From IMG/VR virus record IMGVR_UViG_3300035212_003113, positions 124,001-188,000 of that record: 64,000 nucleotides of DNA. The stretch is one strand, 5' to 3'. Under the pieces are notes generated by a model. It was given only the letters and a program-made list of their open reading frames with translations. It had not been told where the DNA came from and made no database searches. A program made the position numbers and the translations under genes. Shown in pieces: positions 5,078 through 44,560 of this stretch (positions are counted from its first letter, which is position 1; each line of letters opens with the position of its first letter).

Positions 5078-5087
5078 CTGGAGATAT

Positions 5088-22374: not shown

Positions 22375-22398
22375 TCACTGCGGCATGCATCTGCCTTG

Positions 22399-25647: not shown

Positions 25648-25666
25648 GAGTCGCCCCCTCTTCTAC

Positions 25667-28912: not shown

Positions 28913-28928
28913 ATTTACTCCACCCTGA

Positions 28929-31900: not shown

Positions 31901-32216
31901 GTAAGCTAGAGCTAGCAGAGGAAAGAAGGGCAAGTAGGCTGTCAACACTTATTTTATTTAACTCTGTAGAGGCATAATCTATGTACGCAATGTAGCCGTC
32001 TAGCAGCGGTGGTACTATTGGAGCCACCAGGAATTCGCCATAAAAGTAGCCATCTGCCGAGCCGGACAACCCCTGATATGACCCACCATCCAGTGAAAGC
32101 TCTATTCGGCCAAGGTCGTAGTTATACCTAATTATGGCCATACCGGCTTCTGGAACGCCTAGACCCTCGCCCGCCCTAAAGGTCAGAAAAGGAATTGTTT
32201 GTTTTTTCTGCGTCAT
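28929..32216 (-). CDS. tail fibre / virion surface protein A
   Basis: GAGGAG RBS before ATG 32216; repeated LTxDGxGNxSW, ERVRITNAGSVGIGT; C-terminal TKTANYTL...SDGSAWWII domain. Confidence 0.85.
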   Translation of the reverse strand: MTQKKQTIPFLTFRAGEGLGVPEAGMAIIRYNYDLGRIELSLDGGSYQGLSGSADGYFYGEFLVAPIVPPLLDGYIAYIDYASTELNKISVDSLLALLSSASSSLQAAYESGNTITTDSGNGEFSVSGTENISLSSFADIQISAIGTLFLGSGGVDAAWPAAVGSAGTVLTNDGAGNLSWDSPASGAPGGPDRAIQFSNAGVFDGSSALKWLTTGAVVVENLGVEGILSSQYARFVAGPLVPSIGGNEAALGLDLGDPALYLKLGATDDTALLQLQGSLGFSPGLSLRYTNNEYPIEKPLWIDNDGGPIKIGNNSAYYLTTGVTIGSVTTPVNISDAFTLPMIDGASGEVLTTDGAGNVSWAAAGGSGTVTGSGTATRVAFWDGASSLSSNANLYWDNTGSGKLGIGTNAPVAALDIASGQLAIPDGSAAAPAVAFRDNLNSGFFSPSNDIIGVGVNGTEIARFQQSGGSPVFLVGTSTVYGQFTFDSSDVTAGAVMLGHGAAGTVLQESYRGGQFAGVRSRGTKAAPTQIGAGDGMINVLGAGWTATGGINYGAMMTMKAEQAFTSTASGGRIEFHTTASGTDGFTTLGSSTTERVRITNAGSVGIGTTSPISLLSVGSSSQFQVNSSGDIVAIRGQTTTFPAANASGALTNDGSGNLSWSPAGTVTGSGVATRVAFWSGTSSLSSDSNLYWDDSNNRLGVGIATPAHVVDVQAGSTASGVYALNVDATLTPGGGTIVSYIEGSVSASVVAPVYGVIGYLSGAGTPSTSYAGSFGTVIAGSGQDPVSALQANFALQGSAAGTTASGHNIGMMGLASNGARNYAVFGNTTGDGTGANIAVTGMAKNNSGIRIGGLFALQTTGASQPTVNASAALIADNMDKGDPIFLARDNGTTTFSVGNDGVVLSRNTSDGTTAFSVQNAAGSTIFDVDTTNARVGVGTNAPASALSVGASSQFQVSSSGDLTRINDIPYSFPSSQGSANSILTNNGSGTLSWTSGAAQNSTAPISTKTANYTLASSDGTILADASSGAITMTLPSAASAVERIFTIKKKDITANIVTVDADASELIDGATTYTLSTQYEAIKIQSDGSAWWII

Positions 32217-32401
32217 ATGCTCCTCAGCGCCAGGGGATCCAGCCCAATACAATGCACGGAGAACCATAGTTATTAAATGCGGGTGGTCCGCGAGCATTAA
32301 TTATATTTGCGTCAGATCGCAAACAAGCCGCGACCGCCGGCTGCAACTGAAGGCAACTAATTGAATAACAGTCTTTCTGATCTTTTCACATGGAGCAAAT
32401 A

Positions 32402-33301
32402 ATGAAATTTCCGCTTATAAAGATGGCAGCTGACCCCAGCCTAGGCAAAACCTGGCACGATATCTTTAAAAAAACTCCTGTCGCCCAGTTTGTTTCTTCC
32501 TTCAGCGGAAGCGACGATGCTTCGCGTAAAAAGGCACTTCAGCCGATATACGACAGCTACGTGGTATATATGACCACGCTGTCTGATGCAGCGGAAAAAG
32601 AACTGGCAATGAAAAATATTCAAGAGTTGGTGACGGCTCTAACTGCCAGCCCCAAGGCTCCGCAGGCAACGCCCGCGACGGGCAATGCCTCCCCTGCTGC
32701 GCAACCAAAAAAGACCGATACCAATAAATCTGGCCCGCACCCTGGTATGACCGCTCTACAGCAAAAGCTAAATGAATATCTCGCTGCAAATCCAAAAGAA
32801 GGCGTTTCGCCAGTAAAAGTGACCGGCTACCAGGGTGACCAGGGCACATGGGGAGTGATAAAGAAAGTATGGCCGCAATGGTTCGATGGCAACAAGACGA
32901 AGTTCAAAAGCTATTCACAGGTGACTGGCTGGATTGAGAAAGAGATGAGCGCGAAGCCGGCCGGCGCGCCAGATGCTCAAAAAGCTGCACTAAACAACAA
33001 AATTGTCTCAGAAGAAGATCGGCAATTGGTGGCTGCATGGAGAGCATTCTTGCAGGCAGACTCGCTAAATGTAGGCGCTGATGTCGTCAGCACATATGCG
33101 GCCGGCAGCCCTAAGACGGTCGGATCCAATATTGCAAAATACATTGCAGATGGAAAGATGAAAACACCGGTAAAAGCGCCGCTTGAAGCTGCGCAGGCCC
33201 ATCTTGCAATTGGTTTCCCAGCAGAAGCGACAAAGGCCCTTGCCCAAGGCGCTGCAGCTGCAAAAAAATACAAGGGCATGCGAAAGCTGGATAATAAATG
33301 A
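32402..33301 (+). CDS. hypothetical protein with possible peptidoglycan-binding-like segment
   Basis: GGAG RBS; LQQKLN...VTGYQGDQGTWGVIKK resembles PG_binding_1; N-terminal MKFPLIKMA. Confidence 0.6.
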   Translation: MKFPLIKMAADPSLGKTWHDIFKKTPVAQFVSSFSGSDDASRKKALQPIYDSYVVYMTTLSDAAEKELAMKNIQELVTALTASPKAPQATPATGNASPAAQPKKTDTNKSGPHPGMTALQQKLNEYLAANPKEGVSPVKVTGYQGDQGTWGVIKKVWPQWFDGNKTKFKSYSQVTGWIEKEMSAKPAGAPDAQKAALNNKIVSEEDRQLVAAWRAFLQADSLNVGADVVSTYAAGSPKTVGSNIAKYIADGKMKTPVKAPLEAAQAHLAIGFPAEATKALAQGAAAAKKYKGMRKLDNK

Positions 33302-33319
33302 GCGTCTGCTGCACACAGC

Positions 33320-33388
33320 ATGAGAAATAAACCAACTTTTGACCTCGAGTCCTCGGCATAGTCCGAGGACTTCTTTTTTGCCGCTTGA
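33320..33388 (+). pseudogene. relic duplicate of RNase HII 5' end containing a terminator hairpin
   Basis: MRNKPTFDLESSA*SEDFFFAA* vs MIKNSPTFALESSAWSEDLFFAAC; stem agtcctcgg/ccgaggact plus T-run. Confidence 0.85.
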
Positions 33389-33487: not shown

Positions 33488-35389
33488 ATGAAGTATTTTG
33501 TATACAAAGTAGATCACGACTTTAAGCGGCCAGGTGGCTTTCAAGAGGCCACGGATGCAGAGGACAAGATATGGTCGTGTCTAAAGATGTTTCACCAAGA
33601 AGTCGACAGCATCGACAATGCTGACATAGCCTTTATAGGATTGAATAATGCTTCATTTTACTTCAATAAGGGTGACCTTAAGAAAGTGTGGCAAGAGTCT
33701 GTTTGCCCAAGACTCGTCAATAAAGATATCCCACATGTGGCAATATTCACTTACGTTATAAATGAAGATGACCTGAGCTTTATCCCGCCATGGATAACAA
33801 TATGGGCATACGAAACAGAATGCTCGCATCACGACTCCCCGTCTCTGCAGACCACGGACAGCGGATGCGGAGACCGGATGTGCATGATACCATATGTACT
33901 CACTCCTCAGACACATCCTGCGGCAGGAGTTATTGAGACCACAAATATAAATCCTGAAAACTTCAATACCGAGCTGTGGACCAGGAGATCTAACACGGCA
34001 TTTATAGGCTCTTTACAGGCAGGCGGGCGACCGCGCATAAATACTCGCGCTAGCCAAGTTATTGGCTGGCAGTCGCAAATTGGGTGCGACATATATGGAG
34101 ATCGACAAGCTACCGAGCCAAATGACACGTACTCTAGATACAAATTCGCTCTAATTCTGCGAGGGGATACTCCGACTCGTAAAGCGTTCTATCAAGCCAT
34201 TGCAGCCGGGGCAATTCCAGTAATTACTGAAAGCGCATGGCAACAGTACAGCGAGCTGTACAGAGGTCATTGCGAAAGCCTGGCCGACATAGTCGTAGTT
34301 GTGCCAGATAATGCCGAGCTATGGGACTGCGCCGAAATACAAAAGATCCTAAATAAAAGAGCAATGGAGTGCGCTACGTTGCTTCCACGGCTGCACAGCT
34401 GGTCGAGCAAATATCTTGATTATGACAGCGGCGGGGTCGTAGATGCGGCAATGCGCGCAACTCTGGCCAAAGTGAGGAAGCCAGCCATGCCCTTGGCATA
34501 CATCCACTCACTGGAGCCAGCAAGCGTATATCGACCGACAAGCGTAAAGATTAGTGAACAAGAGGTGATAACTGAAGAAAACATACTAGAAAGCCAGTAT
34601 GCCCTGGAGCAAATAATTCTCAAAACCGTCTACAACTATCCTTATAAAACTGGTTGCCTAGACAAGGCAACGGCTGCAATAGTACCAGTTCATACCTTTT
34701 TAACATGCTGGAATCGGCCGAATCACTATTCCGTGATCGACTCTGTAAACGTAATAAAAAAAGCTTTAAATGCGCTCCCTGCATGGAAAAACAGCAGCGT
34801 GCCCCATTACCTTGGATATGCCGATGTTCTTTGGAATGACGAGCGCGTCTTTCTCCGACACGTAGATATTCCTGATAATACAACAGTTATTGCCCTGGAG
34901 GCTTGCGACCTTCCGGTGCAACAAGAGGCAGTCCCATTTCCATGCGGAAGCATGCCTGGTGTTCTTTCATCAGCGGATCGGCAATTAGCTGTGTACATAG
35001 GAAGGGAGAGAGAAGAGGTCAGCGGGTACGATATCGATTACGAGATGATAAACACACCTGGCTGGCACTCTACAAATACCCAAAACACCAGGATTGTGCA
35101 GGCCTACTCCCAGCATAAATTTTCTTTGCAACCTCACGGAGACCGAGTGACAAGGCGAGGCTTCTATCAGTCCGTGGCATGCGGGTGCATACCCGTGATT
35201 ACTGCTGACTGCGTCAAGGCGTATAGCGATGCTACCGGGCTGGATGTATCAGAGTTTTGCATAATTATCCCGGAGTGGCACGAAAACGTTGTAGAACTAT
35301 TGCGACAATCAGACTTCGAGTCCATGCAAAAGAAATTGCCCCAGTTATCATTATCAGGCAGGATCTTGAAAATCACGGGGTTGTACTGA
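33488..35389 (+). CDS. exostosin-family (GT47-like) protein with two tandem domains
   Basis: FALILRGDTPTRKAFYQAIAAGAIPVI and FSLQPHGDRVTRRGFYQSVACGCIPVI. Confidence 0.85.
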   Translation: MKYFVYKVDHDFKRPGGFQEATDAEDKIWSCLKMFHQEVDSIDNADIAFIGLNNASFYFNKGDLKKVWQESVCPRLVNKDIPHVAIFTYVINEDDLSFIPPWITIWAYETECSHHDSPSLQTTDSGCGDRMCMIPYVLTPQTHPAAGVIETTNINPENFNTELWTRRSNTAFIGSLQAGGRPRINTRASQVIGWQSQIGCDIYGDRQATEPNDTYSRYKFALILRGDTPTRKAFYQAIAAGAIPVITESAWQQYSELYRGHCESLADIVVVVPDNAELWDCAEIQKILNKRAMECATLLPRLHSWSSKYLDYDSGGVVDAAMRATLAKVRKPAMPLAYIHSLEPASVYRPTSVKISEQEVITEENILESQYALEQIILKTVYNYPYKTGCLDKATAAIVPVHTFLTCWNRPNHYSVIDSVNVIKKALNALPAWKNSSVPHYLGYADVLWNDERVFLRHVDIPDNTTVIALEACDLPVQQEAVPFPCGSMPGVLSSADRQLAVYIGREREEVSGYDIDYEMINTPGWHSTNTQNTRIVQAYSQHKFSLQPHGDRVTRRGFYQSVACGCIPVITADCVKAYSDATGLDVSEFCIIIPEWHENVVELLRQSDFESMQKKLPQLSLSGRILKITGLY

Positions 35390-35443
35390 GGCAATGCTCT
35401 CGGCTCTGCGTCTGGGCTTTTTTTCTAAGCGTCTCGCGTTAGC

Positions 35444-36055
35444 ATGATCAAAAATTCGCCAACATTCGCTCTTGAGTCCTCGGCGTGGTCCGAGGATCTC
35501 TTTTTTGCTGCTTGCGATGAGGCAGGCTATGGCTGTGCTGCAGGCAGCATGTGGGTGGCCGCAACAATCTGGCCCAAGAATAGTCCCATTCTGCCGTCGA
35601 TGTCGGGCATAAAAGACAGCAAAAAGACTACAGCGGCACAGCGAGAAGAGCTGGTCAAGCTGATTAAAGACAGCTGTCAGTGGTTCTTATGGGAGATAAC
35701 AGTCGACCAGATCAACTCAGGCAATCCATATTGGCTTCGCTTCGAAGCCGCTGACACAGGCCTGGCATCTCTGCCCCCGCTAGTCACATGCTTTGATGGG
35801 AATGTCTGCTTGAAGAATAACAAGCACCACAACACTTGCCAAGTAAAAGGTGACGCGATAAGTATCAGCATAGCTGCGGCGTCTATTCTTGCGAAACATG
35901 CTAAAGATTTAGAATGTAAGGACCTACACGAAAAACATCCAGCATATGGATTCATTAATCACAGCGGATACTTAACAGAAGAGCACACAAAAGCACTAAA
36001 GACGTTCGGCCCAGCGCCCTGTCATCGCAGCAAATACATATCAGCTCACATATAA
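35444..36055 (+). CDS. rnhB: ribonuclease HII
   Basis: DEAGYG, DSKK, FDG, KGD, IAAASILAK, YGFxxHxGY, HR. Confidence 0.93.
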   Translation: MIKNSPTFALESSAWSEDLFFAACDEAGYGCAAGSMWVAATIWPKNSPILPSMSGIKDSKKTTAAQREELVKLIKDSCQWFLWEITVDQINSGNPYWLRFEAADTGLASLPPLVTCFDGNVCLKNNKHHNTCQVKGDAISISIAAASILAKHAKDLECKDLHEKHPAYGFINHSGYLTEEHTKALKTFGPAPCHRSKYISAHI

Positions 36056-36100
36056 ACCGCGCAAAACTTCGACAAAGTAAGAAAAAATGATAGGATAGAT

Positions 36101-37795
36101 ATGAGCGCGCAATGGCTGCCGGTACTGGCAAGCCCTAAGACAAGTAACAAGCATCTCGGGAGAAAAGGTCAAGTGACTTTTTCCGGCGATGCCTTTGATA
36201 AACTTGTTGCAAGCGCAAATATCTCGCTGCAGAACTGGCCGCGCATGGTGCCGCACCGTGCCGAATTTCGCGTTCTAGTCGAGGCGACATTTCCTGGGTT
36301 CTGGGCGCGAGCAGAGGGCGTTGGCGTAGAGCTGGCTACGCGTCTTGTCATGGCCGCCGGACGTGCCGCCGAGACTGGTGCAGCAGTCAAGATCCCAGCT
36401 GGCGATGTTTTTCTATATAAAGCGAAGCAGCTAGGTTTTGCTCAGAAAAAGAACCACTCTTACTTTGCAGAGCGCGAGCGCGCTCGTCAGTTTGTTGCGC
36501 GACGTGGCGGTGGCAGCAGCGCATCACGTATCCTAAAAGATGCCGTAAATAAACTAGGCATGCAGAATCACTGCAGCATTGCCGTCTATGCTGCGCCAAG
36601 CGCCACTCACGTAGTGTTGATACCACATTCTGCCGACGCAGATGTCGGCAGAGTTTATACTGCCGGCCGCGGCGACCAATTCTATCTGGCTGCCGAAGAA
36701 GCAGGAAACAACAACAATCATGTGTCGCGCTACATGACCAGCGTACCAGTAGGCCGCTGGCAGTCTACCGCCTCTAGGCAGCAAATACTGCAGCTTATTG
36801 ATGAGCGCTGCTCACATGCTGGTTATCGCGAAATTCTAAAAGAGACCGTGATCGTCGGCATGGCGAGCGACTTTCGCTCAAACTATATTCAAGAGCACGA
36901 CTCGCAGCGAGTATTTGCGACTGGCGCCAGCATGCAGTTTATGCCATCCTGGTTGCGCAGTGCGTTGTTTCCAGAATGGTTTGAGATGGACTTCTCAAAC
37001 ATGCATCTTGCAATCCTCAATAGCCAAGCCGATCTCGGCATCAACCTGGATACTTCTATTTGGACCCAGATCATGGATACCTGGGAGACTGCGATCAATG
37101 CCGCAGGAGAAGCCCTGGGTCGCGAGGCGATGCTAGATGAGGCCGGAATAAAAGACCTGTTCGACGGCAGCATGAACAGCGGAAATAGCAAAACACTGTT
37201 TTTCGATACCTCCAAGGTTGATCGGACTGCCCTAAAGAAGGCGCTAAAGGTGAGCCTATATAGCCTGCAATTCGGGATGACAGCGCCAGCAGCGCGGCGC
37301 GGCTTTACTGGCGACTTGCTTAAAATGGGCTTCTCGCGCGGAGAGGCTACATTCCTGGGGAACCTTTGGTCACGCGATCCGATCCTGCAAAAGATTGCCA
37401 GTGGTATAAAGGCATACTGCGAAACACATGCCATTAGCCCCAGCGAATTGGCGCTCCGCTGCCAGGCAATCGAAACCACCCTGGTAAAAGAAATCTATAC
37501 AGTTGCACGCAGATTTAAGCGCTCAGACGTCTGCATCACCCTGCACAGCCATGACGGTGTATCAGTGTGGTCGCGTAGCGCGAGCGTAGGGCGAAAGTTT
37601 CATGCGCGCTGTGCGGCACGATGTGCGCGCCTTCTGGAGAAGCTAGGAATCCAGTCACGACTGGAGAGCAAAGGCTTGCCAAAAGAGGTCCGGACAGAAA
37701 AGGCACCCGCGCCCAAGTCAGAAGTGACGTCTTGTGTAGAACTGGCCCTGGTCACTGAGCGCGATTCACGTCCCGTGGCAACCGGCCCTCCTTAG
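36101..37795 (+). CDS. divergent family-A-like polymerase (TV-Pol-like), no exonuclease motifs seen
   Basis: RVF...MQFMPSWLR, EMDFSNMHLAIL (motif A), RxxLKxxLKxxLYxxxFG (motif B), LHSHDGV (motif C). Confidence 0.7.
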   Translation: MSAQWLPVLASPKTSNKHLGRKGQVTFSGDAFDKLVASANISLQNWPRMVPHRAEFRVLVEATFPGFWARAEGVGVELATRLVMAAGRAAETGAAVKIPAGDVFLYKAKQLGFAQKKNHSYFAERERARQFVARRGGGSSASRILKDAVNKLGMQNHCSIAVYAAPSATHVVLIPHSADADVGRVYTAGRGDQFYLAAEEAGNNNNHVSRYMTSVPVGRWQSTASRQQILQLIDERCSHAGYREILKETVIVGMASDFRSNYIQEHDSQRVFATGASMQFMPSWLRSALFPEWFEMDFSNMHLAILNSQADLGINLDTSIWTQIMDTWETAINAAGEALGREAMLDEAGIKDLFDGSMNSGNSKTLFFDTSKVDRTALKKALKVSLYSLQFGMTAPAARRGFTGDLLKMGFSRGEATFLGNLWSRDPILQKIASGIKAYCETHAISPSELALRCQAIETTLVKEIYTVARRFKRSDVCITLHSHDGVSVWSRSASVGRKFHARCAARCARLLEKLGIQSRLESKGLPKEVRTEKAPAPKSEVTSCVELALVTERDSRPVATGPP

Positions 37796-37992
37796 AACTG
37801 CTACAGCTTAAATCCGCAGCTGCCTGAGAGACCGGCGGCTTTTTGTGTTTCTCTTTCATATAAAATCAGCAAAAGCAGCGCCGCCCAGGGCGCCAGAGAA
37901 GTAAGAGCAGATAATCAACGGCAGTCAGCTAGGTGCGGATACTGCCAAATAGCCACTGAGCGTACAGCTTAGGTAAAGAGATTGGTACCTGT

Positions 37993-38379
37993 ATGAAATT
38001 AGAACAAAGTCTTCATATCATGAATGAGTTAGAATTATCACGCTACTTGCTCGCCCGCGGGTTTCCCGAGGAGCTACCGTGTTTCTCTGTCTACGACCTC
38101 TCAATGTTCATGATGGGTCGCCAGGTCACGGAGGCTGAGATTATTACTGGTGGCAAGTCCGTATGCTTGTTTTGGTCATCTAAGAATCTAATTGCTACTA
38201 CAAATATTCTAGAGGAGCCGTGTGCAAGCACCGTTATTCTATCTTCTTTGCGTGGCAGCAATTTCTCTATCTCACTGAGGAGAGCCGGGTTCCACAGTTC
38301 TATTCATCCAATTCAATATACTCCAGAGTGGGTGGACTGTTTTGTGTTTTCGTTGGGCGCGGGGGTGAAGTATGAGTAA
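37993..38379 (+). CDS. hypothetical protein, module gene X1 (paralog of 39173..39559)
   Basis: Shared MKLExxLH, GFP, CxFWSS, LRGSxFS, SIHPxxYTPEWVxCFVF. Confidence 0.75.
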   Translation: MKLEQSLHIMNELELSRYLLARGFPEELPCFSVYDLSMFMMGRQVTEAEIITGGKSVCLFWSSKNLIATTNILEEPCASTVILSSLRGSNFSISLRRAGFHSSIHPIQYTPEWVDCFVFSLGAGVKYE

Positions 38380-39157
38380 GACGGCAGCGCAACAGTATGC
38401 CGAGCTTAAACGAAATAAGCTAAACGCCGCGCGTCAAGCAAAGCTAGAATTAGCTGCATCTAGAGCCAGAAGAGCATCTGTTGCCAAAGATGACAGCATT
38501 GTGCCTTCTGCATCTGCCAATACTATCGGGAAAAGGAATATGAAAAAGGTACCGCTTTACTTCAATTTTGTTGGATCCAGACGCGACATGCTTGACACAG
38601 CGATGGAGTCATATGATCGAGTCGCTGGCGATCTGATAGACGTCAGAGTGCACTATTCATACAGACCGCGCAGATTCACAGAATGCTTAAATGAAATCCT
38701 GAAGATAAATGATGAGCCATACTTCTTCGCTCACTTTGATTCTGTTCTGACAGATCGTAGCGCTATAGAGAATATCCTTGCACATGAGCCAGGTCCCGCT
38801 GGACTAGTAGCGCACTGCTTGATTGTGGACCTTCTCATGTTGGTCGTGCCGAAGGCCGTAAGAAGCATAGGCGGGTGGGACGAAGCATACAGCAATTCCT
38901 GCATGGATCTCGACCTGCAACAGCGGCTGCATAGGAGTGGCCAGACGATGCACATAATTCATTCTGATATAGAGCAGGGCCGCGGAGTTGATCATTTTAA
39001 TGCCAGTGCCGCTAGAAAAGATCCTGCTATGAGAAAAGTGTATGGCGTAACAATGCAGCAGGATTACGACCGATACTATGACAAGTATCACAATCGGTCG
39101 GACCCAGGCTATTTGCATGTGTGTGAGTACATTAAAAAAGAATTTGGCGACGGCTGA
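38372..39157 (+). CDS. GT2-like glycosyltransferase with shared N-terminal tag
   Basis: FAHFDS, IGGWDE, MDLDLQQRL; N-terminus paralogous to 39556..40896. Confidence 0.75.
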   Translation: MSKTAAQQYAELKRNKLNAARQAKLELAASRARRASVAKDDSIVPSASANTIGKRNMKKVPLYFNFVGSRRDMLDTAMESYDRVAGDLIDVRVHYSYRPRRFTECLNEILKINDEPYFFAHFDSVLTDRSAIENILAHEPGPAGLVAHCLIVDLLMLVVPKAVRSIGGWDEAYSNSCMDLDLQQRLHRSGQTMHIIHSDIEQGRGVDHFNASAARKDPAMRKVYGVTMQQDYDRYYDKYHNRSDPGYLHVCEYIKKEFGDG

Positions 39158-39172
39158 TCTGGACTAGTCGGC

Positions 39173-39559
39173 ATGAAGCTTGAAGATCAACTGCATTTGC
39201 TAGAGCCTGTCAGCCTTGCAAGATTTTTTTCTTCCTGCGGTGGGTTTCCATCAGATTGCCAGAGTATGTCCGCGCACGAGGTCGCAGTGAGCTTGCTCAA
39301 CAGAGAGCTGTACGAAGCAGAATGGTCCACTGGAAACATGGAAACTGCTTGTGTATTCTGGTCATCAGGAAAGCTACGCTTAATAAGGCGTCAAACTTTT
39401 GACACTTTTGTGCCGCATGTGGTGGTGGTATCTGCACTTAGGGGTAGTTCGTTCTCGGCAAATGCTGTGCGCCTTGGTCTTTTGCGCTCTATTCATCCTT
39501 TTGCATACACTCCTGAATGGGTCGAATGTTTTGTGTTTGGCGCTAGGGGGGAGGTATGA
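39173..39559 (+). CDS. hypothetical protein, module gene X2 (paralog of 37993..38379)
   Basis: Same conserved blocks as X1; ATGA-coupled to next gene. Confidence 0.75.
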   Translation: MKLEDQLHLLEPVSLARFFSSCGGFPSDCQSMSAHEVAVSLLNRELYEAEWSTGNMETACVFWSSGKLRLIRRQTFDTFVPHVVVVSALRGSSFSANAVRLGLLRSIHPFAYTPEWVECFVFGARGEV

Positions 39560-40896
39560 GCAAGACAGCAGAGCAACGTTATGCCGAGTTCAAGAGGAAT
39601 AGGCTAAATGCCGCGCGACAGGCCAGGATAGAAATGGCCAAGGAAAGGATGCGCAAAGCCTCCGCCATTAAAAATAGCGCCATTTCTTCTAGTCAGACAA
39701 CTGTATTAGATAGCCCGCCCCAAGAGTCACCGATAGCAGTCAGCCATGTAGATAGTTCTTCTGCCGAGCAAGCAAGCACCATTAGTGATGGCTTGTATCA
39801 AGGCCTAGGTGATGAAGAATTTATAATACGACAATTCAAGGATTTCTGTGGTCGCAGTCCCAGTGCAGGCGAACTCAATGCCCATGTCGGTTCGCTTGCA
39901 TCCATGTCGCGATCCGCCGTCAATGACAGATTTGCTTACTGTGACGAGGTCGTGCGCCGTACATGGGCACACAAGAGTGCGCCATTTGATTCTCGATCTA
40001 CATTTAGCGGCTTCCATGGATTGCGAATTGCTGTTCTTCTTACTGGTCACCTAAGAACATTTAAGCAAACCTATCCTGTTTTGCGTTCGCAATTAATTAC
40101 CCCGGCATCCGCAGACGTTTTTGTTCATACGTGGGATACGCTAGGCATCCAGAGGCATGATCCTATATATGGTCCTATTCCTGATGACACTCTAAAAGTC
40201 GATATCTCTGAGATATATAGACTGCTTCCGGAGACGGTTGACGTTAGAGTAGAGGGCAATGCTGCATTTATCGCATGTGCGAAAACGCGCAACAGTCGTC
40301 CATATGTATTTGGATCAGGCAGTGGTCCTAATTCGAAAATGCTTAGCGCTAAGCCGGTTCTTATCGAGAGTCAGTTGTACGGCATATCTTCTGCTTTTAA
40401 GCTAATGGAGCAGCACGAAATAAAAAACGGCTTCAGATATGATCTTGTTATAAAGCTACGCTCGGACATGGAGGTTTTAGATTTTTTTCCTGATCTGGCA
40501 AATTTGAGCACAAAGGATCTTTGGGTTTCAAGCCCACCAGAGAATAATCACAACCACCCTGTATGCTTTGCATGCGAGAGAGGGCCGCACGAAGGGTGTC
40601 ATGCGACAGATGTGTGCGATACATATGCATATGGTGGCCGCGAAGCGATGGCACATTACTGCAGTCTGTGGGATAATCTCGAGACAGTATATGCCCGCAT
40701 GTGCGCAGAAAATAATGTTAATATTATGGATCCAACCGCATCTCACGGTCTTAGGGATGGGCACGTAGTTGTTCCAATTTGGAAAAATGGCGCTAGCCAT
40801 CGTCTGCATTGCTTTTATCCAGAAAGAATACTAAGACTGTATCTAGAGGGCTGGCATCTGAAAAAAGGACGCGTTTCGTGCAAGGTGAAGCGATGA
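39556..40896 (+). CDS. shared tag + DUF4214-like domain + putative glycosyltransferase domain
   Basis: LGDEEFI...GRSP...SR...F..E segment; IAVLLTGHLRTF, DVFVHTW, YDLVIKLRSD, PE. Confidence 0.7.
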   Translation: MSKTAEQRYAEFKRNRLNAARQARIEMAKERMRKASAIKNSAISSSQTTVLDSPPQESPIAVSHVDSSSAEQASTISDGLYQGLGDEEFIIRQFKDFCGRSPSAGELNAHVGSLASMSRSAVNDRFAYCDEVVRRTWAHKSAPFDSRSTFSGFHGLRIAVLLTGHLRTFKQTYPVLRSQLITPASADVFVHTWDTLGIQRHDPIYGPIPDDTLKVDISEIYRLLPETVDVRVEGNAAFIACAKTRNSRPYVFGSGSGPNSKMLSAKPVLIESQLYGISSAFKLMEQHEIKNGFRYDLVIKLRSDMEVLDFFPDLANLSTKDLWVSSPPENNHNHPVCFACERGPHEGCHATDVCDTYAYGGREAMAHYCSLWDNLETVYARMCAENNVNIMDPTASHGLRDGHVVVPIWKNGASHRLHCFYPERILRLYLEGWHLKKGRVSCKVKR

Positions 40897-41095
40897 ATAA
40901 GACGCACCTGCACTTCAACCATGCCGGTGCTCAGTCGTACGGCTGCATCATCCAGTATGTATGCTGCATTAATGAAGGCTGACCTGGAGACATGTTGTAG
41001 TCAAAAAGCGATCCAGATCTCCTCAGACTTGAGGCGCATATTCTAGAGGTATTTGGATAAACACACGATCTGCATTATAATTTTAAAACAAACAG

Positions 41096-41782
41096 ATGAT
41101 GAAAAAAATCGCAATCATAATGCCAACTCGTTCCGCTGGCGGCATCCGTAATACGGCTGCCCAACTAGCTTTTGCCAGCTGGCAGGCAACAACCTCTGGT
41201 CACTCCGACTTCTATTATGGCATGGACACAGATGATCATCATCTTTATGTAGTGCCTGCTGGTGCGAAAACTCTTATAAATGAGAGGTTGCGCCTTGTGC
41301 CAAAGCTAAATAGGATGGCGCAGCAGCTTCAAGAAGAGTACAAGTATTTGTATTTCATAGGCGATGATCATAGATTTGTGACAGCTGCATGGGAAGAGCG
41401 CTTTCTAGAGGATGCCGAAAAGACAGCTGGTTTAACCATAATGTACGGTAATGATCTACTGCAGGGTGCGGCTCTACCGACTGCGGTCTTCATAAGTACT
41501 GCTATCACCTCTGCGCTTGGCTTTATGGCACCTCCATGCATTCAGCATATGTATGCTGATAATTTTTGGAAGGACCTGGGCAGCTCTCTCGGTGTACTAA
41601 AATACTATCCCGATATCATAGTAGAACACATGCATTTCTCAGTTAAGAAATCTAAGTCTGATGCACAATATCGTGAGGTTGCTGCCCTACATAGATCTGA
41701 TGAAGTTGCTTATAAAGAATATCTAAAAAATACTTTTTCTGCTGATATTGAGCGCGTGAGGAAGGCGTGCGGATTGCTGTAG
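41096..41782 (+). CDS. GT2-family glycosyltransferase
   Basis: IIMPTR, DTDD, FIGDDH, HMYADN, VEHMH. Confidence 0.85.
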   Translation: MMKKIAIIMPTRSAGGIRNTAAQLAFASWQATTSGHSDFYYGMDTDDHHLYVVPAGAKTLINERLRLVPKLNRMAQQLQEEYKYLYFIGDDHRFVTAAWEERFLEDAEKTAGLTIMYGNDLLQGAALPTAVFISTAITSALGFMAPPCIQHMYADNFWKDLGSSLGVLKYYPDIIVEHMHFSVKKSKSDAQYREVAALHRSDEVAYKEYLKNTFSADIERVRKACGLL

Positions 41783-42777
41783 TAGGTGGTGGCTTTTACG
41801 GCTGCCTGATTGCGCTACGCTTGTCCGATATTAGCGTAGCGCAAATTGATTTATTTGAGAAAAAGGACAGGCTGCTATCGGGGGCAATCTCCGCAAATCA
41901 GCATCGACTGCACCTGGGGTTTCACTACCCGAGATGCGATCTCACGATATCTCAGGCGATAGAATCTTTTGAACTGTTTGGCTCGCATTATGGCTCTGCA
42001 GTAGAGAATATTGCAGATAACATATACTGTGTTCACGAGAGCAGTGGCGTATCTGCAGAAAATTATGCGGCAAAGATGCTGCAGCACGGGCTTGAGTTCA
42101 AAGAGGTCTCTACCCCGGATGCCATACTAGACAAGGGCTCGATGCCTCTCTCAATACGCGTCAACGAGAAAATGATAAATCTTTCTACTCTGACAAGTAT
42201 CGTGCGCGAGCAAGTATCTCAGTCAAAGGTAAATATTCTCCTTGGGACTGAGGCAGATCCCCGTGAATTATCATCTAGTTATGACTATGTGATAAACTGC
42301 ACATACACGGAGCCTGGTCTAGGCGTAGGTATTAAAACAAAATCAGAGCTGGCGGTCATGCTTCTTGCGCAAGCCCCCGCCCAGTGGGCAGGAAAGGCGA
42401 TAACAATAATGGACGGCCCATTCTGTAGCATATATCCTGCTGACAACGGGATGCATACAATAAGCTCCGTAGTTCATACGCCTGCTATCCGAGCTGCATC
42501 AAGCAGGATGCTAGAAAGAATAGCCGGATCACTCGGCCCAGCGGACTGGGCTGAGATAGATCAGAATATACTTTATCATGCTGGTTCTCTTGTTAATCTA
42601 GACGGCTTTAACATAGTTGGTCGCTATGTCACGATAAAGACAAAGCTCGAACAAGATCGGAATGATTTCCGAGGCACATTTGTTGTTCAAAAAGATAATG
42701 TAATTTCTGTTATGGCAGGAAAGATATCCTGCGCATTTCTTGTCATAGATGAAATTCTAAAAAAGATTGGTGCATGA
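41767..42777 (+). CDS. FAD-dependent oxidoreductase
   Basis: IAVVGGGFYG Rossmann motif, NQHRLHLGFHYPR, INCTY, TIMDGPF, GKI. Confidence 0.88.
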   Translation: MRIAVVGGGFYGCLIALRLSDISVAQIDLFEKKDRLLSGAISANQHRLHLGFHYPRCDLTISQAIESFELFGSHYGSAVENIADNIYCVHESSGVSAENYAAKMLQHGLEFKEVSTPDAILDKGSMPLSIRVNEKMINLSTLTSIVREQVSQSKVNILLGTEADPRELSSSYDYVINCTYTEPGLGVGIKTKSELAVMLLAQAPAQWAGKAITIMDGPFCSIYPADNGMHTISSVVHTPAIRAASSRMLERIAGSLGPADWAEIDQNILYHAGSLVNLDGFNIVGRYVTIKTKLEQDRNDFRGTFVVQKDNVISVMAGKISCAFLVIDEILKKIGA

Positions 42778-43511
42778 TGGATGCTATAGTCGGAGCGTCG
42801 GGCTTTGTAGGCGCAAGTCTCGCTAAGATAATAAATGCAAAGCATTTTACCTCTGCGAATATCTCAGAGCTAGCGGATCACCGGCCCGATACGGTATGGG
42901 TAGCTGCGCCATCTGCGGTCAAGTGGAAGGCCAATGCCGAGCCAGACGTAGACGCGGCCAGTGTGCGTGCCTTGTGCGCAAGCGTAAACTCTGCTGCTCC
43001 CACTAGAATAGTGCATTTCAGCACCGTCGATGTTTACGGCTCGGCCCAATTTGTTCATGCTCCAGATGAGAATGTGCTGCCACTGCCAGACTGTCCATAT
43101 GGAGCCAATCGCCTGTGGCTGGAAAACAACTGGAGTGCAGACTCCGTACAAGTAGTAAGATTGCCAGGTCTATTTGGCAGCGGACTGAAAAAGAACATTA
43201 TATTCGACCTAATAAACTCTCGGAATCACGGAGCTGTATCATTAGACAGCCATTTCCAGTGGTATGATATGTCGGACTTTGAAAGTCTAGTATCTGAAAT
43301 CAATTCAGCTGGACCCGGTGTATTGAATATAGCGGTCGAGCCACTGCACACAGAACTACTGGTTCAGAGTGCGTTTCCTGAGGTGCAAGATCTATGCACA
43401 GGAACCGGTCGTGCAAAATATGACATGCGGAGCAAGAATGGATACCGATTTTCAAAAGATATCGTCATTGAACAGATCCAGAGATACGTTGCAGCATGTC
43501 GCAATATGTAG
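42774..43511 (+). CDS. NAD-dependent epimerase/dehydratase-like SDR
   Basis: VGASGFVG, SAVKWKAN, STVDVY, YGANR, RLPGLFG, FQWYD. Confidence 0.88.
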   Translation: MMDAIVGASGFVGASLAKIINAKHFTSANISELADHRPDTVWVAAPSAVKWKANAEPDVDAASVRALCASVNSAAPTRIVHFSTVDVYGSAQFVHAPDENVLPLPDCPYGANRLWLENNWSADSVQVVRLPGLFGSGLKKNIIFDLINSRNHGAVSLDSHFQWYDMSDFESLVSEINSAGPGVLNIAVEPLHTELLVQSAFPEVQDLCTGTGRAKYDMRSKNGYRFSKDIVIEQIQRYVAACRNM

Positions 43512-44211
43512 CATATCAGGAGTAGCATTTCCAAAGATGGAGATTGCTCCAACCATGTACGGCGACTGGGAATCCCTGTTTTCTGGTGCTGCGAAAATAG
43601 ACATCGTACCCGCTGCAATTCAGAGTTGCTTTTTTAACACCAAGCATAATCTGTACTCTGGTCCAGATGAATGGGTCCAGCACTTGAATATGGTTGCGGA
43701 CCTCTCCCGTAGTCTGGGGTGCTTTTACTTGGTCGTAGGTAGCCCAGGTGCTCGTTTCGCGCCGGCCCACATGCTAGGCGTCCCCGGCGAGTTATCCGCA
43801 GCAGACCGTGTATTGGCAAATGTGCTTGCAAAAGCTGCCGACTCAAACAAAGACATCTTTTTTGGGCTAGAGGCAAATCCGGTCAAGTATGGAGCGAATA
43901 CGGCTACAGATGCTGCCTCAGCAATAAGAATAGCAGAGTTTGCAGATCGCAGCAATATATGCTTTCATATTGACACGGGTTGCCTAAGGGTTGCGGGCGA
44001 TGATCCGGTTCAAGTATTATCAGATGGCGCTGCAATAATTAAACGTGGCCACGTCTCTATGCCCGACTTGCTGCCATACGACGGGTCGGAGCGCGAGTTC
44101 ATACGCAAGGCGCTGCAGCTTGGCATAGGACTGAGTTATGAGGCTCGACCCAGTGCAACTGGAGAGGATGGTGCTGCACGTTTTTTGCAGGATGTTGAAG
44201 CAGCTTTATAG
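43489..44211 (+). CDS. sugar phosphate isomerase/epimerase (xylose-isomerase-like TIM barrel)
   Basis: EIAPT, VVGSPGAR, LEANPVKYG, HIDTG, HVSMP, SYE; start inferred at TTG 43489. Confidence 0.8.
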   Translation: MQHVAICSISGVAFPKMEIAPTMYGDWESLFSGAAKIDIVPAAIQSCFFNTKHNLYSGPDEWVQHLNMVADLSRSLGCFYLVVGSPGARFAPAHMLGVPGELSAADRVLANVLAKAADSNKDIFFGLEANPVKYGANTATDAASAIRIAEFADRSNICFHIDTGCLRVAGDDPVQVLSDGAAIIKRGHVSMPDLLPYDGSEREFIRKALQLGIGLSYEARPSATGEDGAARFLQDVEAAL

Positions 44212-44239: not shown

Positions 44240-44560
44240 ATGAAGTCAAAGTGCAATGAATGCTGGGATCTGGCGCGGCAGTTTGCCGCTGCGGGCGACT
44301 CGGATCATGCTGCAGAGGCGGCGGAGCTGGGTCATAAATTTGCGGTCGCCGAGCGCCGGCCCCGTAAAGCTGAGCACGATCACGAGGGCCGCATGGCCGT
44401 TGGAGAGCTGAGCTCGCTTGCGAAAAACGTAGACGAGCTACGCTCTCTCGTAGGTAAAGACGACGAGCTTCCGGGCTGGGTCTCGGCCTATATTACGCTC
44501 GCTTCGGATTACATGAACAGCGTCGCGCAATACATGCGCCATCCTGACGACGAAGAGTAG
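44240..44560 (+). CDS. phage hypothetical protein
   Basis: DHEGRMA...DELPGWVSAYITLASDYM pattern recalled from large-phage proteins. Confidence 0.65.
   Translation: MKSKCNECWDLARQFAAAGDSDHAAEAAELGHKFAVAERRPRKAEHDHEGRMAVGELSSLAKNVDELRSLVGKDDELPGWVSAYITLASDYMNSVAQYMRHPDDEE

What the first reader, a model, noticed from the sequence alone, without database searches (positions are those of the whole stretch)
33488..44211. Glycan-building island beside the fibre array: candidate virion glycosylation pathway
Seen: GT47x2, GT2-like, DUF4214-GT, GT2 and a sugar-synthesis cassette lie directly beside the fibre genes, with a GT4 + GT-A pair at 4004-5771. That gives six GT-like genes. The fibres are very Ser/Thr-rich. 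Established: virion glycosylation by phage GTs is known in some actinophages and in giant viruses; DNA glucosylation usually needs a base hydroxymethylase, and none is seen here. Inference: assembly of a multi-sugar glycan on the virion or host surface.
Basis: partly seen in the sequence, partly recalled or inferred. Interest (0 to 1): 0.72.

Follow-up and report, generated by a model that had tools for sequence, protein, structure and literature searches.

The report
Phage glycan-building gene island
A 372-kb jumbo phage from lake water carries, beside four tail-fibre genes, several sugar-transferring enzymes and a three-enzyme sugar-remodelling cassette that also occurs in giant viruses and bacterial capsule loci. 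The sequence does not show whether the glycan goes on the virion, the DNA or the host surface.

Summary
33488-35389 is one gene with two GT47 (exostosin) modules. p261 (38372-39157) and p446 (39556-40896) have GT-A folds. 41096-41782 (GT228) belongs to a phage glycosyltransferase family. The "sugar-synthesis cassette" is an overlapping trio: an FAD oxidase with a D-amino-acid-oxidase fold, a short epimerase-like SDR, and a xylose-isomerase-like TIM barrel. It is not a standard nucleotide-sugar pathway, because the genome has no sugar nucleotidyltransferase. RNase HII and a polymerase-like gene interrupt the island. The GT47 gene is an insertion flanked by an 87-nt repeat and is missing from two relatives.

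The main new result is that the trio travels as a unit. It is fused into one 855-aa protein beside a tandem GT47 on a giant-virus-like contig. It sits in a compact GT4-GT228-FAD-SDR-TIM-p446 cassette in an unrelated phage. Relatives of the FAD enzyme lie in bacterial capsule/O-antigen loci.

Genome-wide I found one canonical thymidylate synthase and no TET/JBP, C5-methylase or TGT, so the known routes to DNA glycosylation lack an acceptor-making enzyme.

Assembly of a multi-sugar glycan is well supported. Virion glycosylation is the leading guess but is unproven.

The parts
18559..32297 (-). Array of four large fibre or spike genes: 18559-22092, 22399-25647, 25667-28912, 28929-32297.
   Evidence: The third has a Peptidase_S74 chaperone domain and matches phrog_4636 'tail spike' at 1e-34. 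The second matches virion-structural and head-decoration phrogs. Fibres 1 and 2 share about 220 N-terminal residues (45% identity). Fibres 3 and 4 share repeats with structural ORFs in the main tail block. Ser+Thr is 19.7-23.5%.
32390..33301 (+). 303-aa Ala-rich protein of unknown function, between the fibres and the GT47 gene.
   Evidence: No significant Pfam, NCBIfam or PHROG family. No tblastn hit in L004, and the gene calls for L033 show nothing between the fibre and RNase HII.
33301..33387 (+). Repeat copy 1: a degenerate duplicate of the 5' end of the RNase HII gene, including a hairpin and T-run.
   Evidence: 87-nt direct repeat, 72% identical to 35428-35514. The hairpin scores as terminator-like.
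33488..35389 (+). Tandem GT47 (exostosin-type) glycosyltransferase, 633 aa, two modules, soluble.
   Evidence: Pfam PF03016, 77.8 bits, two stretches. Internal repeat. No transmembrane segment. Only 19 relatives were found in 5.8 billion proteins. Beyond the phage's own lineage they sit on giant-virus-like contigs. The gene is absent from relatives L033 and L035.
35428..35514 (+). Repeat copy 2: the functional 5' end of the RNase HII gene.
35444..36055 (+). RNase HII. It interrupts the island and is not a glycan gene.
   Evidence: Pfam PF01351, 3e-26.
36101..37795 (+). 564-aa protein that weakly resembles a family A DNA polymerase. It is not a GT.
   Evidence: No Pfam hit. Atlas structure matches to DNA_pol_A clusters at TM 0.38-0.46. 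Conserved in L004 and L033.
37993..38379 (+). p128a: small conserved protein of unknown function whose gene overlaps the start of p261.
   Evidence: 39% identical to p128b. Orthologue upstream of the p446 orthologue in L004 and L033.
38372..39157 (+). p261: GT-A (GT2-like) glycosyltransferase with a basic N-terminal helix of about 45 aa.
   Evidence: Atlas feature score 0.97, TM about 0.6 to GT2 clusters over residues 55-261. The N-terminus is 48% identical to that of p446. The orthologues in L004 and L033 lack the helix.
39173..39559 (+). p128b: paralogue of p128a whose gene overlaps the start of p446.
39556..40896 (+). p446: basic helix, then a weak DUF4214-like segment, then a DUF7796-type GT-A domain with a CxxC...H...H insert.
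   Evidence: AF2 pLDDT 93.5. GT-A fold. DUF7796 in 10 of 49 relatives. 618 representative relatives. A p446-like gene lies next to the trio in L034, L036, L042 and L048 and near it in L009.
41096..41782 (+). GT228: small phage-type glycosyltransferase.
   Evidence: phrog_14945 at 7e-38. 35-38% identical to annotated GTs of Streptomyces Stanwilliamsviridae phages. 47% identical to the gene directly upstream of the FAD gene in L036.
41767..42777 (+). FAD336: FAD-dependent oxidase with a D-amino-acid-oxidase / glycine-oxidase fold.
   Evidence: Pfam DAO and NAD_binding_8. AF2 pLDDT 96.4. Best PDB matches are glycine oxidase, DAAO, opine dehydrogenase and glycerol-3-phosphate oxidase. Bacterial relatives lie in capsule/O-antigen clusters, two of them next to an SDR. 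227 viral stretches encode a relative.
42774..43511 (+). SDR245: short epimerase/dehydratase-like NAD(P) enzyme. Its gene overlaps FAD336 by 4 nt.
   Evidence: Pfam Epimerase, 31.3 bits. It is the only Epimerase hit in the genome. Weak PDB matches to nucleotide-sugar epimerases. It follows the FAD gene in L004, L033, L034, L036 and others.
43438..44211 (+). TIM280: xylose-isomerase-like TIM barrel. The ORF is open from 43369. The true start is probably 43420 or 43438.
   Evidence: No Pfam hit of its own. Its 51-53% identical orthologues in L004 and L033, and the homologues in L034 and L009, hit PF01261 AP_endonuc_2.
44240..44560 (+). 106-aa conserved protein of unknown function that follows the trio in this lineage.
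   Evidence: 64-67% identical in L004 and L033.
4004..5771 (+). Distant GT pair: a GT4-type GT-B (4004-5077) and a small GT-A (5088-5771).
   Evidence: GT4-conflict 28.3 bits against cut-off 26. Glyco_tranf_2_3 27.8 against 27. phrog_2170 at 1e-25. The GT4 is homologous to the GT fused or adjacent to the cassette in L034 and L036, and it co-occurs with FAD336 relatives in 20 of 80 viral loci.

Best explanation
The island is a cytoplasmic glycan-assembly system of a jumbo tailed phage.

Shown:
- It encodes five soluble glycosyltransferase genes with six GT domains: a two-module GT47, two GT-A enzymes (p261 and the DUF7796-type p446) and the small GT228.
- It encodes a translationally coupled trio: a DAAO-fold FAD oxidase, an epimerase-like SDR and a xylose-isomerase-like TIM barrel.
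- The trio moves as one unit among tailed phages, giant-virus MAGs and (the FAD enzyme with an SDR partner) bacterial capsule/O-antigen loci. It is always beside glycosyltransferases.

Inferred:
- The phage has no sugar nucleotidyltransferase, so it must draw on host nucleotide sugars.
- The trio converts a common sugar into a rare epimer or keto derivative. The flavoenzyme would oxidise a C-OH (or C-NH2) to a ketone, the TIM barrel would isomerise or epimerise next to the carbonyl, and the SDR would reduce it back. This is the logic of DprE1/DprE2 and RmlC/RmlD.
- The GTs then build a multi-sugar chain. The DUF7796-type GT-A is the most likely user of the trio's product, because it co-occurs with the trio in several separate viral lineages.
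- The GT47 pair is a later add-on that extends the chain.

Least certain step: the acceptor. My leading guess is phage structural proteins (fibres or other virion surface proteins), as in chloroviruses, mimiviruses and mycobacteriophages.
For: - GT assignments.
- Trio anatomy (overlapping genes) and folds.
- Fusion: on the giant-virus-like contig L009 an 855-aa protein carries SDR+TIM+FAD directly upstream of a tandem GT47, with a p446-like gene 3.6 kb away.
- Same gene order in unrelated phages: GT4, GT2, FAD, SDR, TIM, then a DUF7796-like gene in L034; GT4, GT228, FAD, SDR, TIM, p446 in L036.
- Giant-virus MAGs L068, L088 and L110 carry FAD+SDR, the first two with TIM as well.
- Bacterial FAD336 relatives sit among Wzy, Wzx, GT1, heptose and NeuB genes, two of them next to an adh_short gene.
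- Pfam tally of 71 ORFs flanking viral FAD336 relatives: GT1 7, adh_short 6, GFO_IDH_MocA 5, AP_endonuc_2 4, Epimerase 3, sugar methyltransferases, GDP-mannose dehydratase 2; no thymidylate-synthase, TET or DNA-methylase family among the 25 families listed. FAD-GFO_IDH_MocA fusions form whole viral clusters.
- No island protein has a membrane segment.
- No nucleotidyltransferase in the genome.
- For a virion target: the island starts 1.2 kb from the fibre array and stays next to fibres in relatives L004 and L033. A seventh GT follows the baseplate/tail block directly. Close and distant relatives of the module are in giant viruses, where virion glycosylation by virus-encoded cytosolic GTs is established. 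PBCV-1 A075L, once annotated as an exostosin, is one example (PMC11571054, PMC9614988).
Against: - Nothing in the sequence identifies the acceptor.
- The island is on the opposite strand from the fibres. It lies in a plus-strand block with RNase HII, a polymerase-like gene, an IMPDH/GMP-reductase-like gene, ClpP, a primase-like gene and SbcCD-like genes. It is not inside a structural operon.
- The fibre/RNase HII junction is a variable insertion site, so the adjacency may be incidental.
- High Ser/Thr content is not specific to glycosylated proteins.
- The chemistry proposed for the trio rests on folds and gene context only. No characterised orthologue was found.
- The SDR has YxxxR where the usual motif is YxxxK (read from the translation).
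Confidence: 0.45

Rival explanations
1. DNA hypermodification. The GTs and the sugar cassette decorate a hydroxylated base in phage DNA to block host nucleases, as in T4 (glucosyl-hmC), RB69/DLP3 (arabinosyl-5-hydroxycytosine) or the TET/5mYOX-GT phages.
For: - The island is interleaved with RNase HII and a polymerase-like gene and lies in a replication and nucleotide-metabolism block.
- GT228 also matches part of phrog_2675, annotated 'DNA methyltransferase'. Its Streptomyces-phage homologues sit among replication genes.
- The distal GT4 hits the Pfam family 'GT4 in conflict systems'.
- Multi-gene sugar-synthesis plus multi-GT clusters for DNA are documented (PMC13326640; bioRxiv 10.1101/2023.12.21.572611).
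Against: - The genome has a single ThyA-family gene. It keeps the Leu and Asn equivalent to E. coli L143 and N177, which mark a dTMP synthase rather than a hydroxymethyl- or hydroxy-dCMP synthase (criteria from PMC13326640).
- No Tet_JBP, no C5 DNA methylase and no TGT/DpdA was found.
- FAD336 relatives sit in capsule/O-antigen loci and in sugar-modifying neighbourhoods, not next to ThyS or 5mYOX genes.
- The giant-virus-like relatives pair the module with GT11 and CAP59-type glycan-extending GTs.
Confidence: 0.17
2. Host envelope remodelling. During infection the enzymes alter LPS, capsule or S-layer glycan intermediates on the cytoplasmic side. This would block superinfection or stop progeny from sticking to lysed cells.
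For: - Bacterial homologues of FAD336 with a partner SDR work in surface-polysaccharide clusters.
- Atlas structure neighbours of p446 include Campylobacterota 'capsular biosynthesis' clusters.
- The phage depends on host nucleotide sugars.
Against: - No island protein has a transmembrane segment or signal peptide.
- No flippase, polymerase, initiating phosphoglycosyl transferase or Gtr-type membrane component lies in or near the island.
- The same module occurs in giant viruses of eukaryotes, whose hosts have no such envelope.
Confidence: 0.2
3. No single pathway. The GT genes are independent accessory genes gathered in a variable region, each with its own target, and they do not build one glycan.
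For: - The GT47 gene is a separate insertion, absent in L033 and L035.
- The p128/N-helix unit was duplicated only in this phage.
- RNase HII and the polymerase-like gene split the island.
- The GT4/GT-A pair is 28 kb away.
Against: - The block from p128 and p446 through p261, GT228, FAD, SDR and TIM to p106 keeps its order in three members of the lineage.
- Subsets recur as compact or fused units in unrelated viruses, together with GT47 (L009, L042) or with GT4 (L034, L036).
Confidence: 0.1

Closest known systems
Giant-virus virion glycosylation machinery: chlorovirus PBCV-1 A064R, A075L, A111/114R; Mimivirus fibril glycan clusters.
   Same: Virus-encoded, soluble, cytoplasmic GTs, clustered with sugar-modifying enzymes, build a multi-sugar glycan independently of host ER/Golgi-type machinery. 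An exostosin-annotated GT-B (A075L) is involved (PMC11571054, PMC9614988). The nearest relatives of the tandem GT47 outside this phage lineage, and a fused form of the trio, lie on giant-virus-like contigs and GVMAGs.
   Different: The host here is a bacterium and the virus is a tailed phage. There is no detectable sequence similarity to A075L or any other solved structure. The characterised giant-virus pathways (UDP-rhamnose, viosamine, bacillosamine, GDP-fucose) use standard SDR, aminotransferase and dehydratase steps, not a DAAO-fold flavoenzyme plus TIM barrel.
Mycobacteriophage virion glycosylation (Freeman et al. 2023, cited in PMC12619734).
   Same: Phage-encoded GTs lie near structural genes and are thought to decorate virion proteins.
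   Different: As I recall, those systems have one to three GTs inside the capsid/tail operon that act on C-terminal extensions of the capsid and tail-tube proteins. Here there are five to seven GTs plus a sugar-redox cassette, transcribed divergently from the fibres. No acceptor motif has been identified.
Phage DNA glycosylation clusters: T4 alpha/beta-GT; RB69/DLP3 arabinosyl-5hoC; 5mYOX-GT gene clusters.
   Same: Several GTs sit with dedicated sugar-supply genes near replication genes. Epimerase-GT pairing is common.
   Different: The defining acceptor-making enzyme is missing. There is no ThyA homologue with the N177D and L143D/E changes, and no 5mYOX with a C5-methylase.
Two-enzyme oxidation/reduction sugar epimerases (DprE1/DprE2) and keto-sugar epimerase/reductase pairs (RmlC/RmlD).
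   Same: The logic is the same: a flavin oxidase makes a keto sugar and an SDR reduces it with inverted stereochemistry, with an optional epimerisation next to the carbonyl. The FAD gene is coupled to an SDR or GFO_IDH_MocA reductase in most contexts examined.
   Different: As I recall, DprE1 is a VAO-fold flavoenzyme acting on a polyprenyl-phospho-sugar. FAD336 has the DAAO/glycine-oxidase fold. The substrate is unknown and the resemblance is by logic only.
CAZy family GT47 (exostosins; plant MUR3, IRX10, ARAD1).
   Same: Pfam Exostosin_GT47 is matched above the cut-off in both halves.
   Different: The protein is soluble and has no type II membrane anchor. It has two GT47 modules in one chain and is encoded by a phage. 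GT47 activity, donor and acceptor are untested.

Membership tests
GT47 / Pfam Exostosin_GT47 | Sequence match to the family profile above the curated threshold. | tested here: met
   77.8 bits against cut-off 33.4, two stretches. The six-frame search gives 44.9 and 30.4 bits, 79.6 combined.
GT47 / Pfam Exostosin_GT47 | Type II membrane anchor, as in the eukaryotic Golgi enzymes. | tested here: not met
   The highest 19-residue Kyte-Doolittle mean is 1.23 and there is no N-terminal hydrophobic segment. The protein is soluble, like chlorovirus A075L.
GT47 / Pfam Exostosin_GT47 | GT-B fold and inverting transfer from a nucleotide sugar. | not tested
   No structure model was made for this protein (the structure quota went to FAD336 and p446). 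There is no PDB sequence match.
GT-A fold glycosyltransferases (p261, p446) | Single Rossmann-like nucleotide-sugar-binding domain with the GT-A topology. | tested here: met
   p446 residues 140-446: AF2 pLDDT 93.5; Foldseek E 3e-6 and VIA Z about 12 to GT6, GT8 and GT2 enzymes. p261: Atlas TM about 0.6 to GT2 clusters.
GT-A fold glycosyltransferases (p261, p446) | Canonical DxD metal and donor-binding motif. | tested here: inconclusive
   The p446 family conserves YDxVIKxRxD and several other Asp residues but has no clear DxD. I recall that metal-independent GT-A enzymes such as BoGT6a, one of its top structural hits, lack DxD.
Phage DNA glycosylation systems | An enzyme that makes the hydroxylated acceptor base: a ThyA homologue with N177D and L143D/E, or a 5mYOX/TET usually with a C5-methylase. 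| tested here: not met
   There is one ThyA gene, with Leu (ALPPCH) and Asn (PTNIA) retained. No Tet_JBP (the control genomes did not ring either, so this negative is weaker). No DNA_methylase.
Phage DNA glycosylation systems | 7-deazaguanine route (DpdA/TGT). | tested here: not met
   No TGT match.
Phage DNA glycosylation systems | Modified bases present in virion DNA. | not testable with these tools
   Needs nucleoside LC-MS or raw long-read signal. The public runs available are assembled contigs only.
Virion glycosylation systems (giant-virus or mycobacteriophage type) | Virus-encoded soluble GTs linked in the genome to structural genes. | tested here: inconclusive
   The island is adjacent to the fibre array here and in L004 and L033. 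It is divergently transcribed and mixed with replication genes. A seventh GT directly follows the tail/baseplate block.
Virion glycosylation systems (giant-virus or mycobacteriophage type) | Glycan demonstrated on capsid, tail or fibre proteins. | not testable with these tools
   The phage is uncultured and known only from lake-water metagenomes.
Seroconverting Gtr-type or O-antigen-modifying phage systems | Membrane components: GtrA flippase, GtrB bactoprenol GT, an integral-membrane GtrC, or Wzx/Wzy. | tested here: not met
   No transmembrane segment in any island protein. No such Pfam family in the island or its flanks.
Classical nucleotide-sugar biosynthesis cassette | A sugar-1-phosphate nucleotidyltransferase with a 4,6-dehydratase, epimerase and reductase of the extended SDR type. 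| tested here: not met
   No NTP_transferase anywhere in the genome. The only Epimerase-family hit is the 245-aa SDR. The cassette is FAD oxidase + SDR + TIM barrel instead.

The most novel reading that the evidence does not exclude
The FAD oxidase / reductase / TIM-barrel trio, together with the DUF7796-type GT-A, is an undescribed rare-sugar pathway. It would work by oxidising, epimerising and then reducing a sugar. It has been exchanged as a cassette among tailed phages, giant viruses of eukaryotes and bacterial capsule loci. In this jumbo phage, extended by an exostosin-type double GT47 that is otherwise seen mostly on giant-virus-like contigs, it builds a complex glycan coat on the fibres or virion. 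This would be large-scale, giant-virus-style virion glycosylation in a tailed phage that is not an actinophage.
Probability: 0.3. Interest if true: 0.75.

Novelty: new variant of a known kind. Interest (0 to 1): 0.55.

Why it matters
Glycosylation encoded by a virus is well documented in giant viruses and in a few actinophages. For DNA it is documented in several phage groups.

This island gives two things that can be tested. The first is a compact enzyme cassette of unknown chemistry: a DAAO-fold flavoenzyme, a reductase and a TIM barrel, usually with a DUF7796 GT-A. It recurs in at least 227 viral stretches, in giant-virus MAGs and in bacterial capsule loci, so solving it once would annotate many genes. 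The second is a tailed phage that carries an exostosin-type double GT47 whose nearest relatives outside its lineage are on giant-virus-like contigs. That points to gene flow of glycan machinery between viral realms.

If the glycan is on the virion, it would bear on phage adsorption, environmental stability and recognition by grazers or by immunity. If it is on DNA, it would be a glycosylation route that needs no known acceptor-making enzyme.

Tried and rejected
- Megablast of the island and tblastn of the GT47 protein against 50,697 phage records found nothing. A single-protein scan of viral contigs returned only a 100% identical fragment.
- PDB sequence searches for GT47, GT228, FAD336, SDR245 and TIM280 gave no match or only weak ones. 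The weak ThiG hits of the TIM barrel (E 0.003), together with the glycine-oxidase (ThiO) fold of FAD336, suggested thiazole synthesis. I rejected this because the orthologues hit AP_endonuc_2 and the gene contexts are all glycan-related.
- p564 as a second GT47: rejected.
- Complex prediction of p446 with p128b gave 'no answer'. This is evidence neither for nor against binding.
- Read laying over 32000-37900 in four lake runs (assembled contigs) showed no variants and no joints that would indicate excision of the GT47 cassette.
- A promoter-motif search, meant to place the island in a temporal class, found a strong bipartite motif only at 1-100 kb and 351-371 kb of the genome. No shared motif turned up for the window's operons.
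- The impression that p446 orthologues in relatives carry a heptosyltransferase-like N-terminal domain could not be confirmed.
- Searching the contigs behind L006 and L008-L010 for an NCLDV capsid gene was not possible because those records are not held. Their 'giant-virus-like' label therefore rests on gene content: A32-like ATPase, eukaryotic-type kinases, ankyrin, Rpb7, MutS, SNF2 and low GC. The GVMAG-named loci add support.
- No moraphage genome (PMC12619734) was compared here. The abstract gives genomes up to 307 kb, against 372 kb here.

Full report
**Setting.** The window is bases 124001-188000 of a 371,675-bp IMG/VR virus record with direct terminal repeats. My simple ORF call gives about 502 ORFs, 94% coding, 51% GC, with 415 ORFs on the plus strand. 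It is a tailed jumbo phage. A baseplate wedge protein (phrog_6, 9e-43) and tail-fibre and virion phrogs lie at 244-314 kb. No NCLDV capsid gene was found. The sequence occurs in lake and river metagenomes. The window also encodes Lon, a GroEL-type chaperonin, ClpP and a bS21 homologue.

**Checking the observation: the GT genes.**
- 33488-35389 is one 633-aa protein with two Exostosin_GT47 stretches (77.8 bits, cut-off 33.4). Its halves share a conserved 64-residue motif.
- p261 (38372-39157) has no Pfam hit, but residues 57-261 match GT2-type GT-A clusters in the ESM Atlas.
- p446 (39556-40896) has only a sub-threshold DUF4214 match. A high-confidence AF2 model of residues 140-446 (pLDDT 93.5) is a GT-A fold. 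It matches GT6/GT8 enzymes in Foldseek at E 3e-6 and gives VIA Z about 12 to many GT-A enzymes. Ten of 49 relatives hit DUF7796.
- GT228 (41096-41782) matches phrog_14945 'glycosyltransferase' at 7e-38. It is 35-38% identical to annotated GTs of Streptomyces phages.
- The GT4/GT-A pair at 4004-5771 passes the Pfam cut-offs narrowly and matches phrog_2170 at 1e-25.
A seventh, a 387-aa GT4, lies at G000:313990-315153, directly after the tail/baseplate block.

**Checking the observation: corrections.**
- RNase HII (35444-36055) and a 564-aa protein with weak polymerase A-like structure interrupt the island.
- The four minus-strand ORFs at 18559-32297 are fibre or spike proteins. The evidence is an S74 chaperone domain, a tail-spike phrog, shared N-terminal anchors, and repeats shared with ORFs of the main tail block.
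- Their Ser+Thr content is 19.7-23.5%, against a genome mean of 12.6% (sd 3.9). This is enriched but does not diagnose glycosylation.

**The 'sugar cassette'.** Three genes overlap in series. The first is FAD336, which hits Pfam DAO and NAD_binding_8. The second is SDR245, which hits Pfam Epimerase and is the only such hit in the genome. The third is a TIM barrel whose orthologues hit AP_endonuc_2.
- The AF2 model of FAD336 (pLDDT 96.4) is closest to glycine oxidase, D-amino-acid oxidase, opine dehydrogenase and glycerol-3-phosphate oxidase. These are flavoenzymes that oxidise a C-N or C-OH bond.
- The genome has no sugar-1-phosphate nucleotidyltransferase. The phage therefore cannot activate sugars itself, and the cassette is not a classical nucleotide-sugar pathway.

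**Evidence from relatives.** This is the most informative part.
1. *Same lineage.* L004, L033 and L035 keep the gene order p128, p446, p261, GT228, FAD, SDR, TIM, p106, then the IMPDH-like gene.
2. *Giant-virus-like contig L009.* It has 27.5% GC and carries a protein kinase, ankyrin repeats, GT11 and CAP59-type GTs. An 855-aa protein there is a fusion of SDR, TIM and FAD, directly upstream of a tandem GT47. A p446-like gene lies 3.6 kb away.
3. *Unrelated phages.* L034 has GT4, GT2, FAD, SDR, TIM and then a p446-like gene (32% identity, 1e-46). L036 has GT4, GT228, FAD, SDR, TIM and p446 in about 6 kb. L042 (29% GC) has FAD, p446, SDR, GT47 and TIM.
4. *Scale.* A profile scan of IMG/VR found 227 viral stretches that encode FAD336 relatives. 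They include GVMAG-named giant-virus MAGs and other jumbo phages.
5. *Neighbours.* A Pfam tally of 71 ORFs flanking 19 diverse viral loci is dominated by GT1, adh_short, GFO_IDH_MocA, AP_endonuc_2, Epimerase, sugar methyltransferases and GDP-mannose dehydratase. No thymidylate-synthase, TET or DNA-methylase family is among the 25 families listed.
6. *Fusions.* FAD fused to GFO_IDH_MocA forms whole viral clusters.
7. *Bacteria.* FAD336 relatives sit in capsule/O-antigen loci with Wzy, Wzx, GT1, heptose-pathway and NeuB genes. In two of the three loci examined they are coupled to an adh_short gene.

The FAD enzyme with an NAD(P) reductase partner is therefore a recurrent glycan-pathway unit. In viruses it usually comes with the TIM barrel and GTs.

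**The GT47 gene is an add-on.** It is flanked by an 87-nt direct repeat (33301-33387 and 35428-35514). Copy 2 is the start of the RNase HII gene. Copy 1 is a decayed duplicate of that start. L004 shows the same duplication. L033 and L035 go from the fibre (or contig start) straight to RNase HII with no GT47. The tandem GT47 family is tiny: 19 proteins in 5.8 billion. Beyond this phage lineage its members lie on contigs with giant-virus-type genes, including an A32-like ATPase, kinases, Rpb7, SNF2, MutS and PIF1.

**Duplication specific to this phage.** The unit made of p128 plus the first 45 or so residues of p446 has been copied in front of p261. Relatives have one p126 gene and a p446 orthologue with a different, longer N-terminal domain.

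**Where does the glycan go?**

*DNA.* The published criteria for hydroxymethyl- or hydroxy-dCMP synthases are Asp at the position of E. coli N177 and Asp or Glu at L143 (PMC13326640). The only ThyA-family gene in the genome (G000:240087-240941) keeps Leu (ALPPCH) and Asn (PTNIA) and scores as a thymidylate synthase. No Tet_JBP, C5 DNA methylase or TGT was found. The known DNA routes therefore lack an acceptor. Against dismissing DNA:
- the island sits among replication-type genes;
- GT228 partly matches a phrog annotated as DNA methyltransferase;
- DNA-modifying GT clusters of this size exist.

*Host envelope.* No island protein has a membrane segment and there is no flippase or polymerase. 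The module also occurs in viruses of eukaryotes.

*Virion proteins.* This fits three observations. The island stays next to the fibres in three lineage members. A seventh GT follows the tail block. The giant-virus connection also fits, because cytosolic virus-encoded GTs, including the formerly 'exostosin' A075L, glycosylate capsids there. Still, the island is divergently transcribed and the junction is an insertion hot spot, so adjacency is weak evidence.

My estimates are virion proteins about 0.45, host envelope about 0.2, DNA about 0.17 and unrelated accessory genes about 0.1.

**Mechanism.**
- Shown: the domain and fold assignments, the gene coupling, the fusions and the co-occurrence.
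- Inferred: host nucleotide sugars are the donors. The flavoenzyme oxidises a sugar C-OH or C-NH2 to a ketone, the TIM barrel isomerises or epimerises next to it, and the SDR reduces it to give a rare sugar. This is an analogy with DprE1/DprE2 and RmlC/RmlD that I recall, not something tested here. The DUF7796-type GT-A uses or accepts this sugar. p261, GT228 and the two GT47 modules extend the chain. The distal GT4/GT-A pair probably belongs to the same system, because its GT4 homologue is fused or adjacent to the cassette in L034 and L036 and co-occurs in 20 of 80 viral loci.
- Caveat: SDR245 has YxxxR in place of the usual YxxxK (read).

**Comparison and novelty.** Jumbo-phage surveys already note multiple core GTs and mention both DNA and virion targets (PMC12619734). 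A GT-rich island is therefore not new in kind. The new points are:
1. the FAD/SDR/TIM cassette with a DUF7796 GT-A as a mobile unit shared by phages, giant-virus MAGs and, in part, bacterial capsule loci;
2. a soluble double GT47 in a tailed phage, inserted as a cassette, with its other relatives on giant-virus-like contigs;
3. the absence of every known acceptor-making enzyme for DNA glycosylation.

I rate it a new variant of a known kind, with interest 0.55.

**What led nowhere.** The complex prediction for p446 and p128b gave no answer. Laying contigs from four lake runs showed no variants. The promoter-motif analysis could not assign a temporal class.

Noticed in passing
window 33301-33387 and 35428-35514: An 87-nt direct repeat brackets the GT47 gene. 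Copy 2 is the 5' end of the RNase HII gene and includes a strong hairpin and T-run. Copy 1 is a decayed duplicate with an in-frame stop. Relative L004 has the same duplication. Relatives without the GT47 gene (L033, L035) have a single copy. The fibre/RNase HII junction looks like a cassette insertion site.
   Followed up: yes
G000:1-100000 and 351000-371675 (outside the window): About 46 copies of a bipartite promoter-like motif (GGCCCTAAAG, about 12 nt, CGATCCTGA; variant CCGGTCCTAAAAACA, about 10 nt, TGATCCTG). All but four are on the plus strand, many of them 20-60 nt upstream of small ORFs. None occurs between 100 and 200 kb, which includes the window. This is probably an early-gene promoter class.
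   Followed up: partly
G000:313990-315153 (L024:5990-7153): A seventh glycosyltransferase (GT4 type; Glycos_transf_1 at 4e-12) lies immediately downstream of the last large gene of the baseplate/tail block.
   Followed up: partly
G000:317857-319203 (L024:9857-11203): A tubulin/FtsZ-family GTPase with a TubZ-like C-terminal domain (PhuZ/TubZ-like), followed by a UvsW-like helicase.
   Followed up: no
window 46482-46745: An 87-aa ORF is a homologue of ribosomal protein bS21 (E about 1e-6 to bS21 chains in solved ribosomes). The syntenic gene in relative L033 hits Pfam Ribosomal_S21.
   Followed up: partly
window 16816-17874: A class-V aminotransferase / cysteine desulfurase-like gene (weak NifS, IscS and DndA matches) lies just upstream of the fibre array, after the GroEL-type chaperonin (15026-16774) and Lon (10540-12960).
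   Followed up: no
window 37993-40896 compared with L004:14713-17314 and L033:6375-9308: In this phage alone, the unit made of p128 plus the first 45 or so residues (a basic helix) of p446 is duplicated in front of p261. In relatives the p446 orthologue carries an extra N-terminal domain of 150-250 aa of unknown kind, and the p261 orthologue has no helix.
   Followed up: partly
window 44617-45678: An IMPDH/GMP-reductase-family gene of 353 aa, with no CBS insert judging by its length, lies directly after the island. It is conserved in position in L004 and L033.
   Followed up: no
window 54711-62807: A single 2698-aa ORF on the plus strand. It was not examined.
   Followed up: no
L028 (Streptomyces phage Jay2Jay) and L029 (Blueeyedbeauty): Homologues of both GT228 and the window's GT4 occur in Stanwilliamsviridae phages. 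The GT228 homologue sits beside a second GT and a small cytidylyltransferase-like gene among replication genes. Their function appears to be unknown.
   Followed up: no
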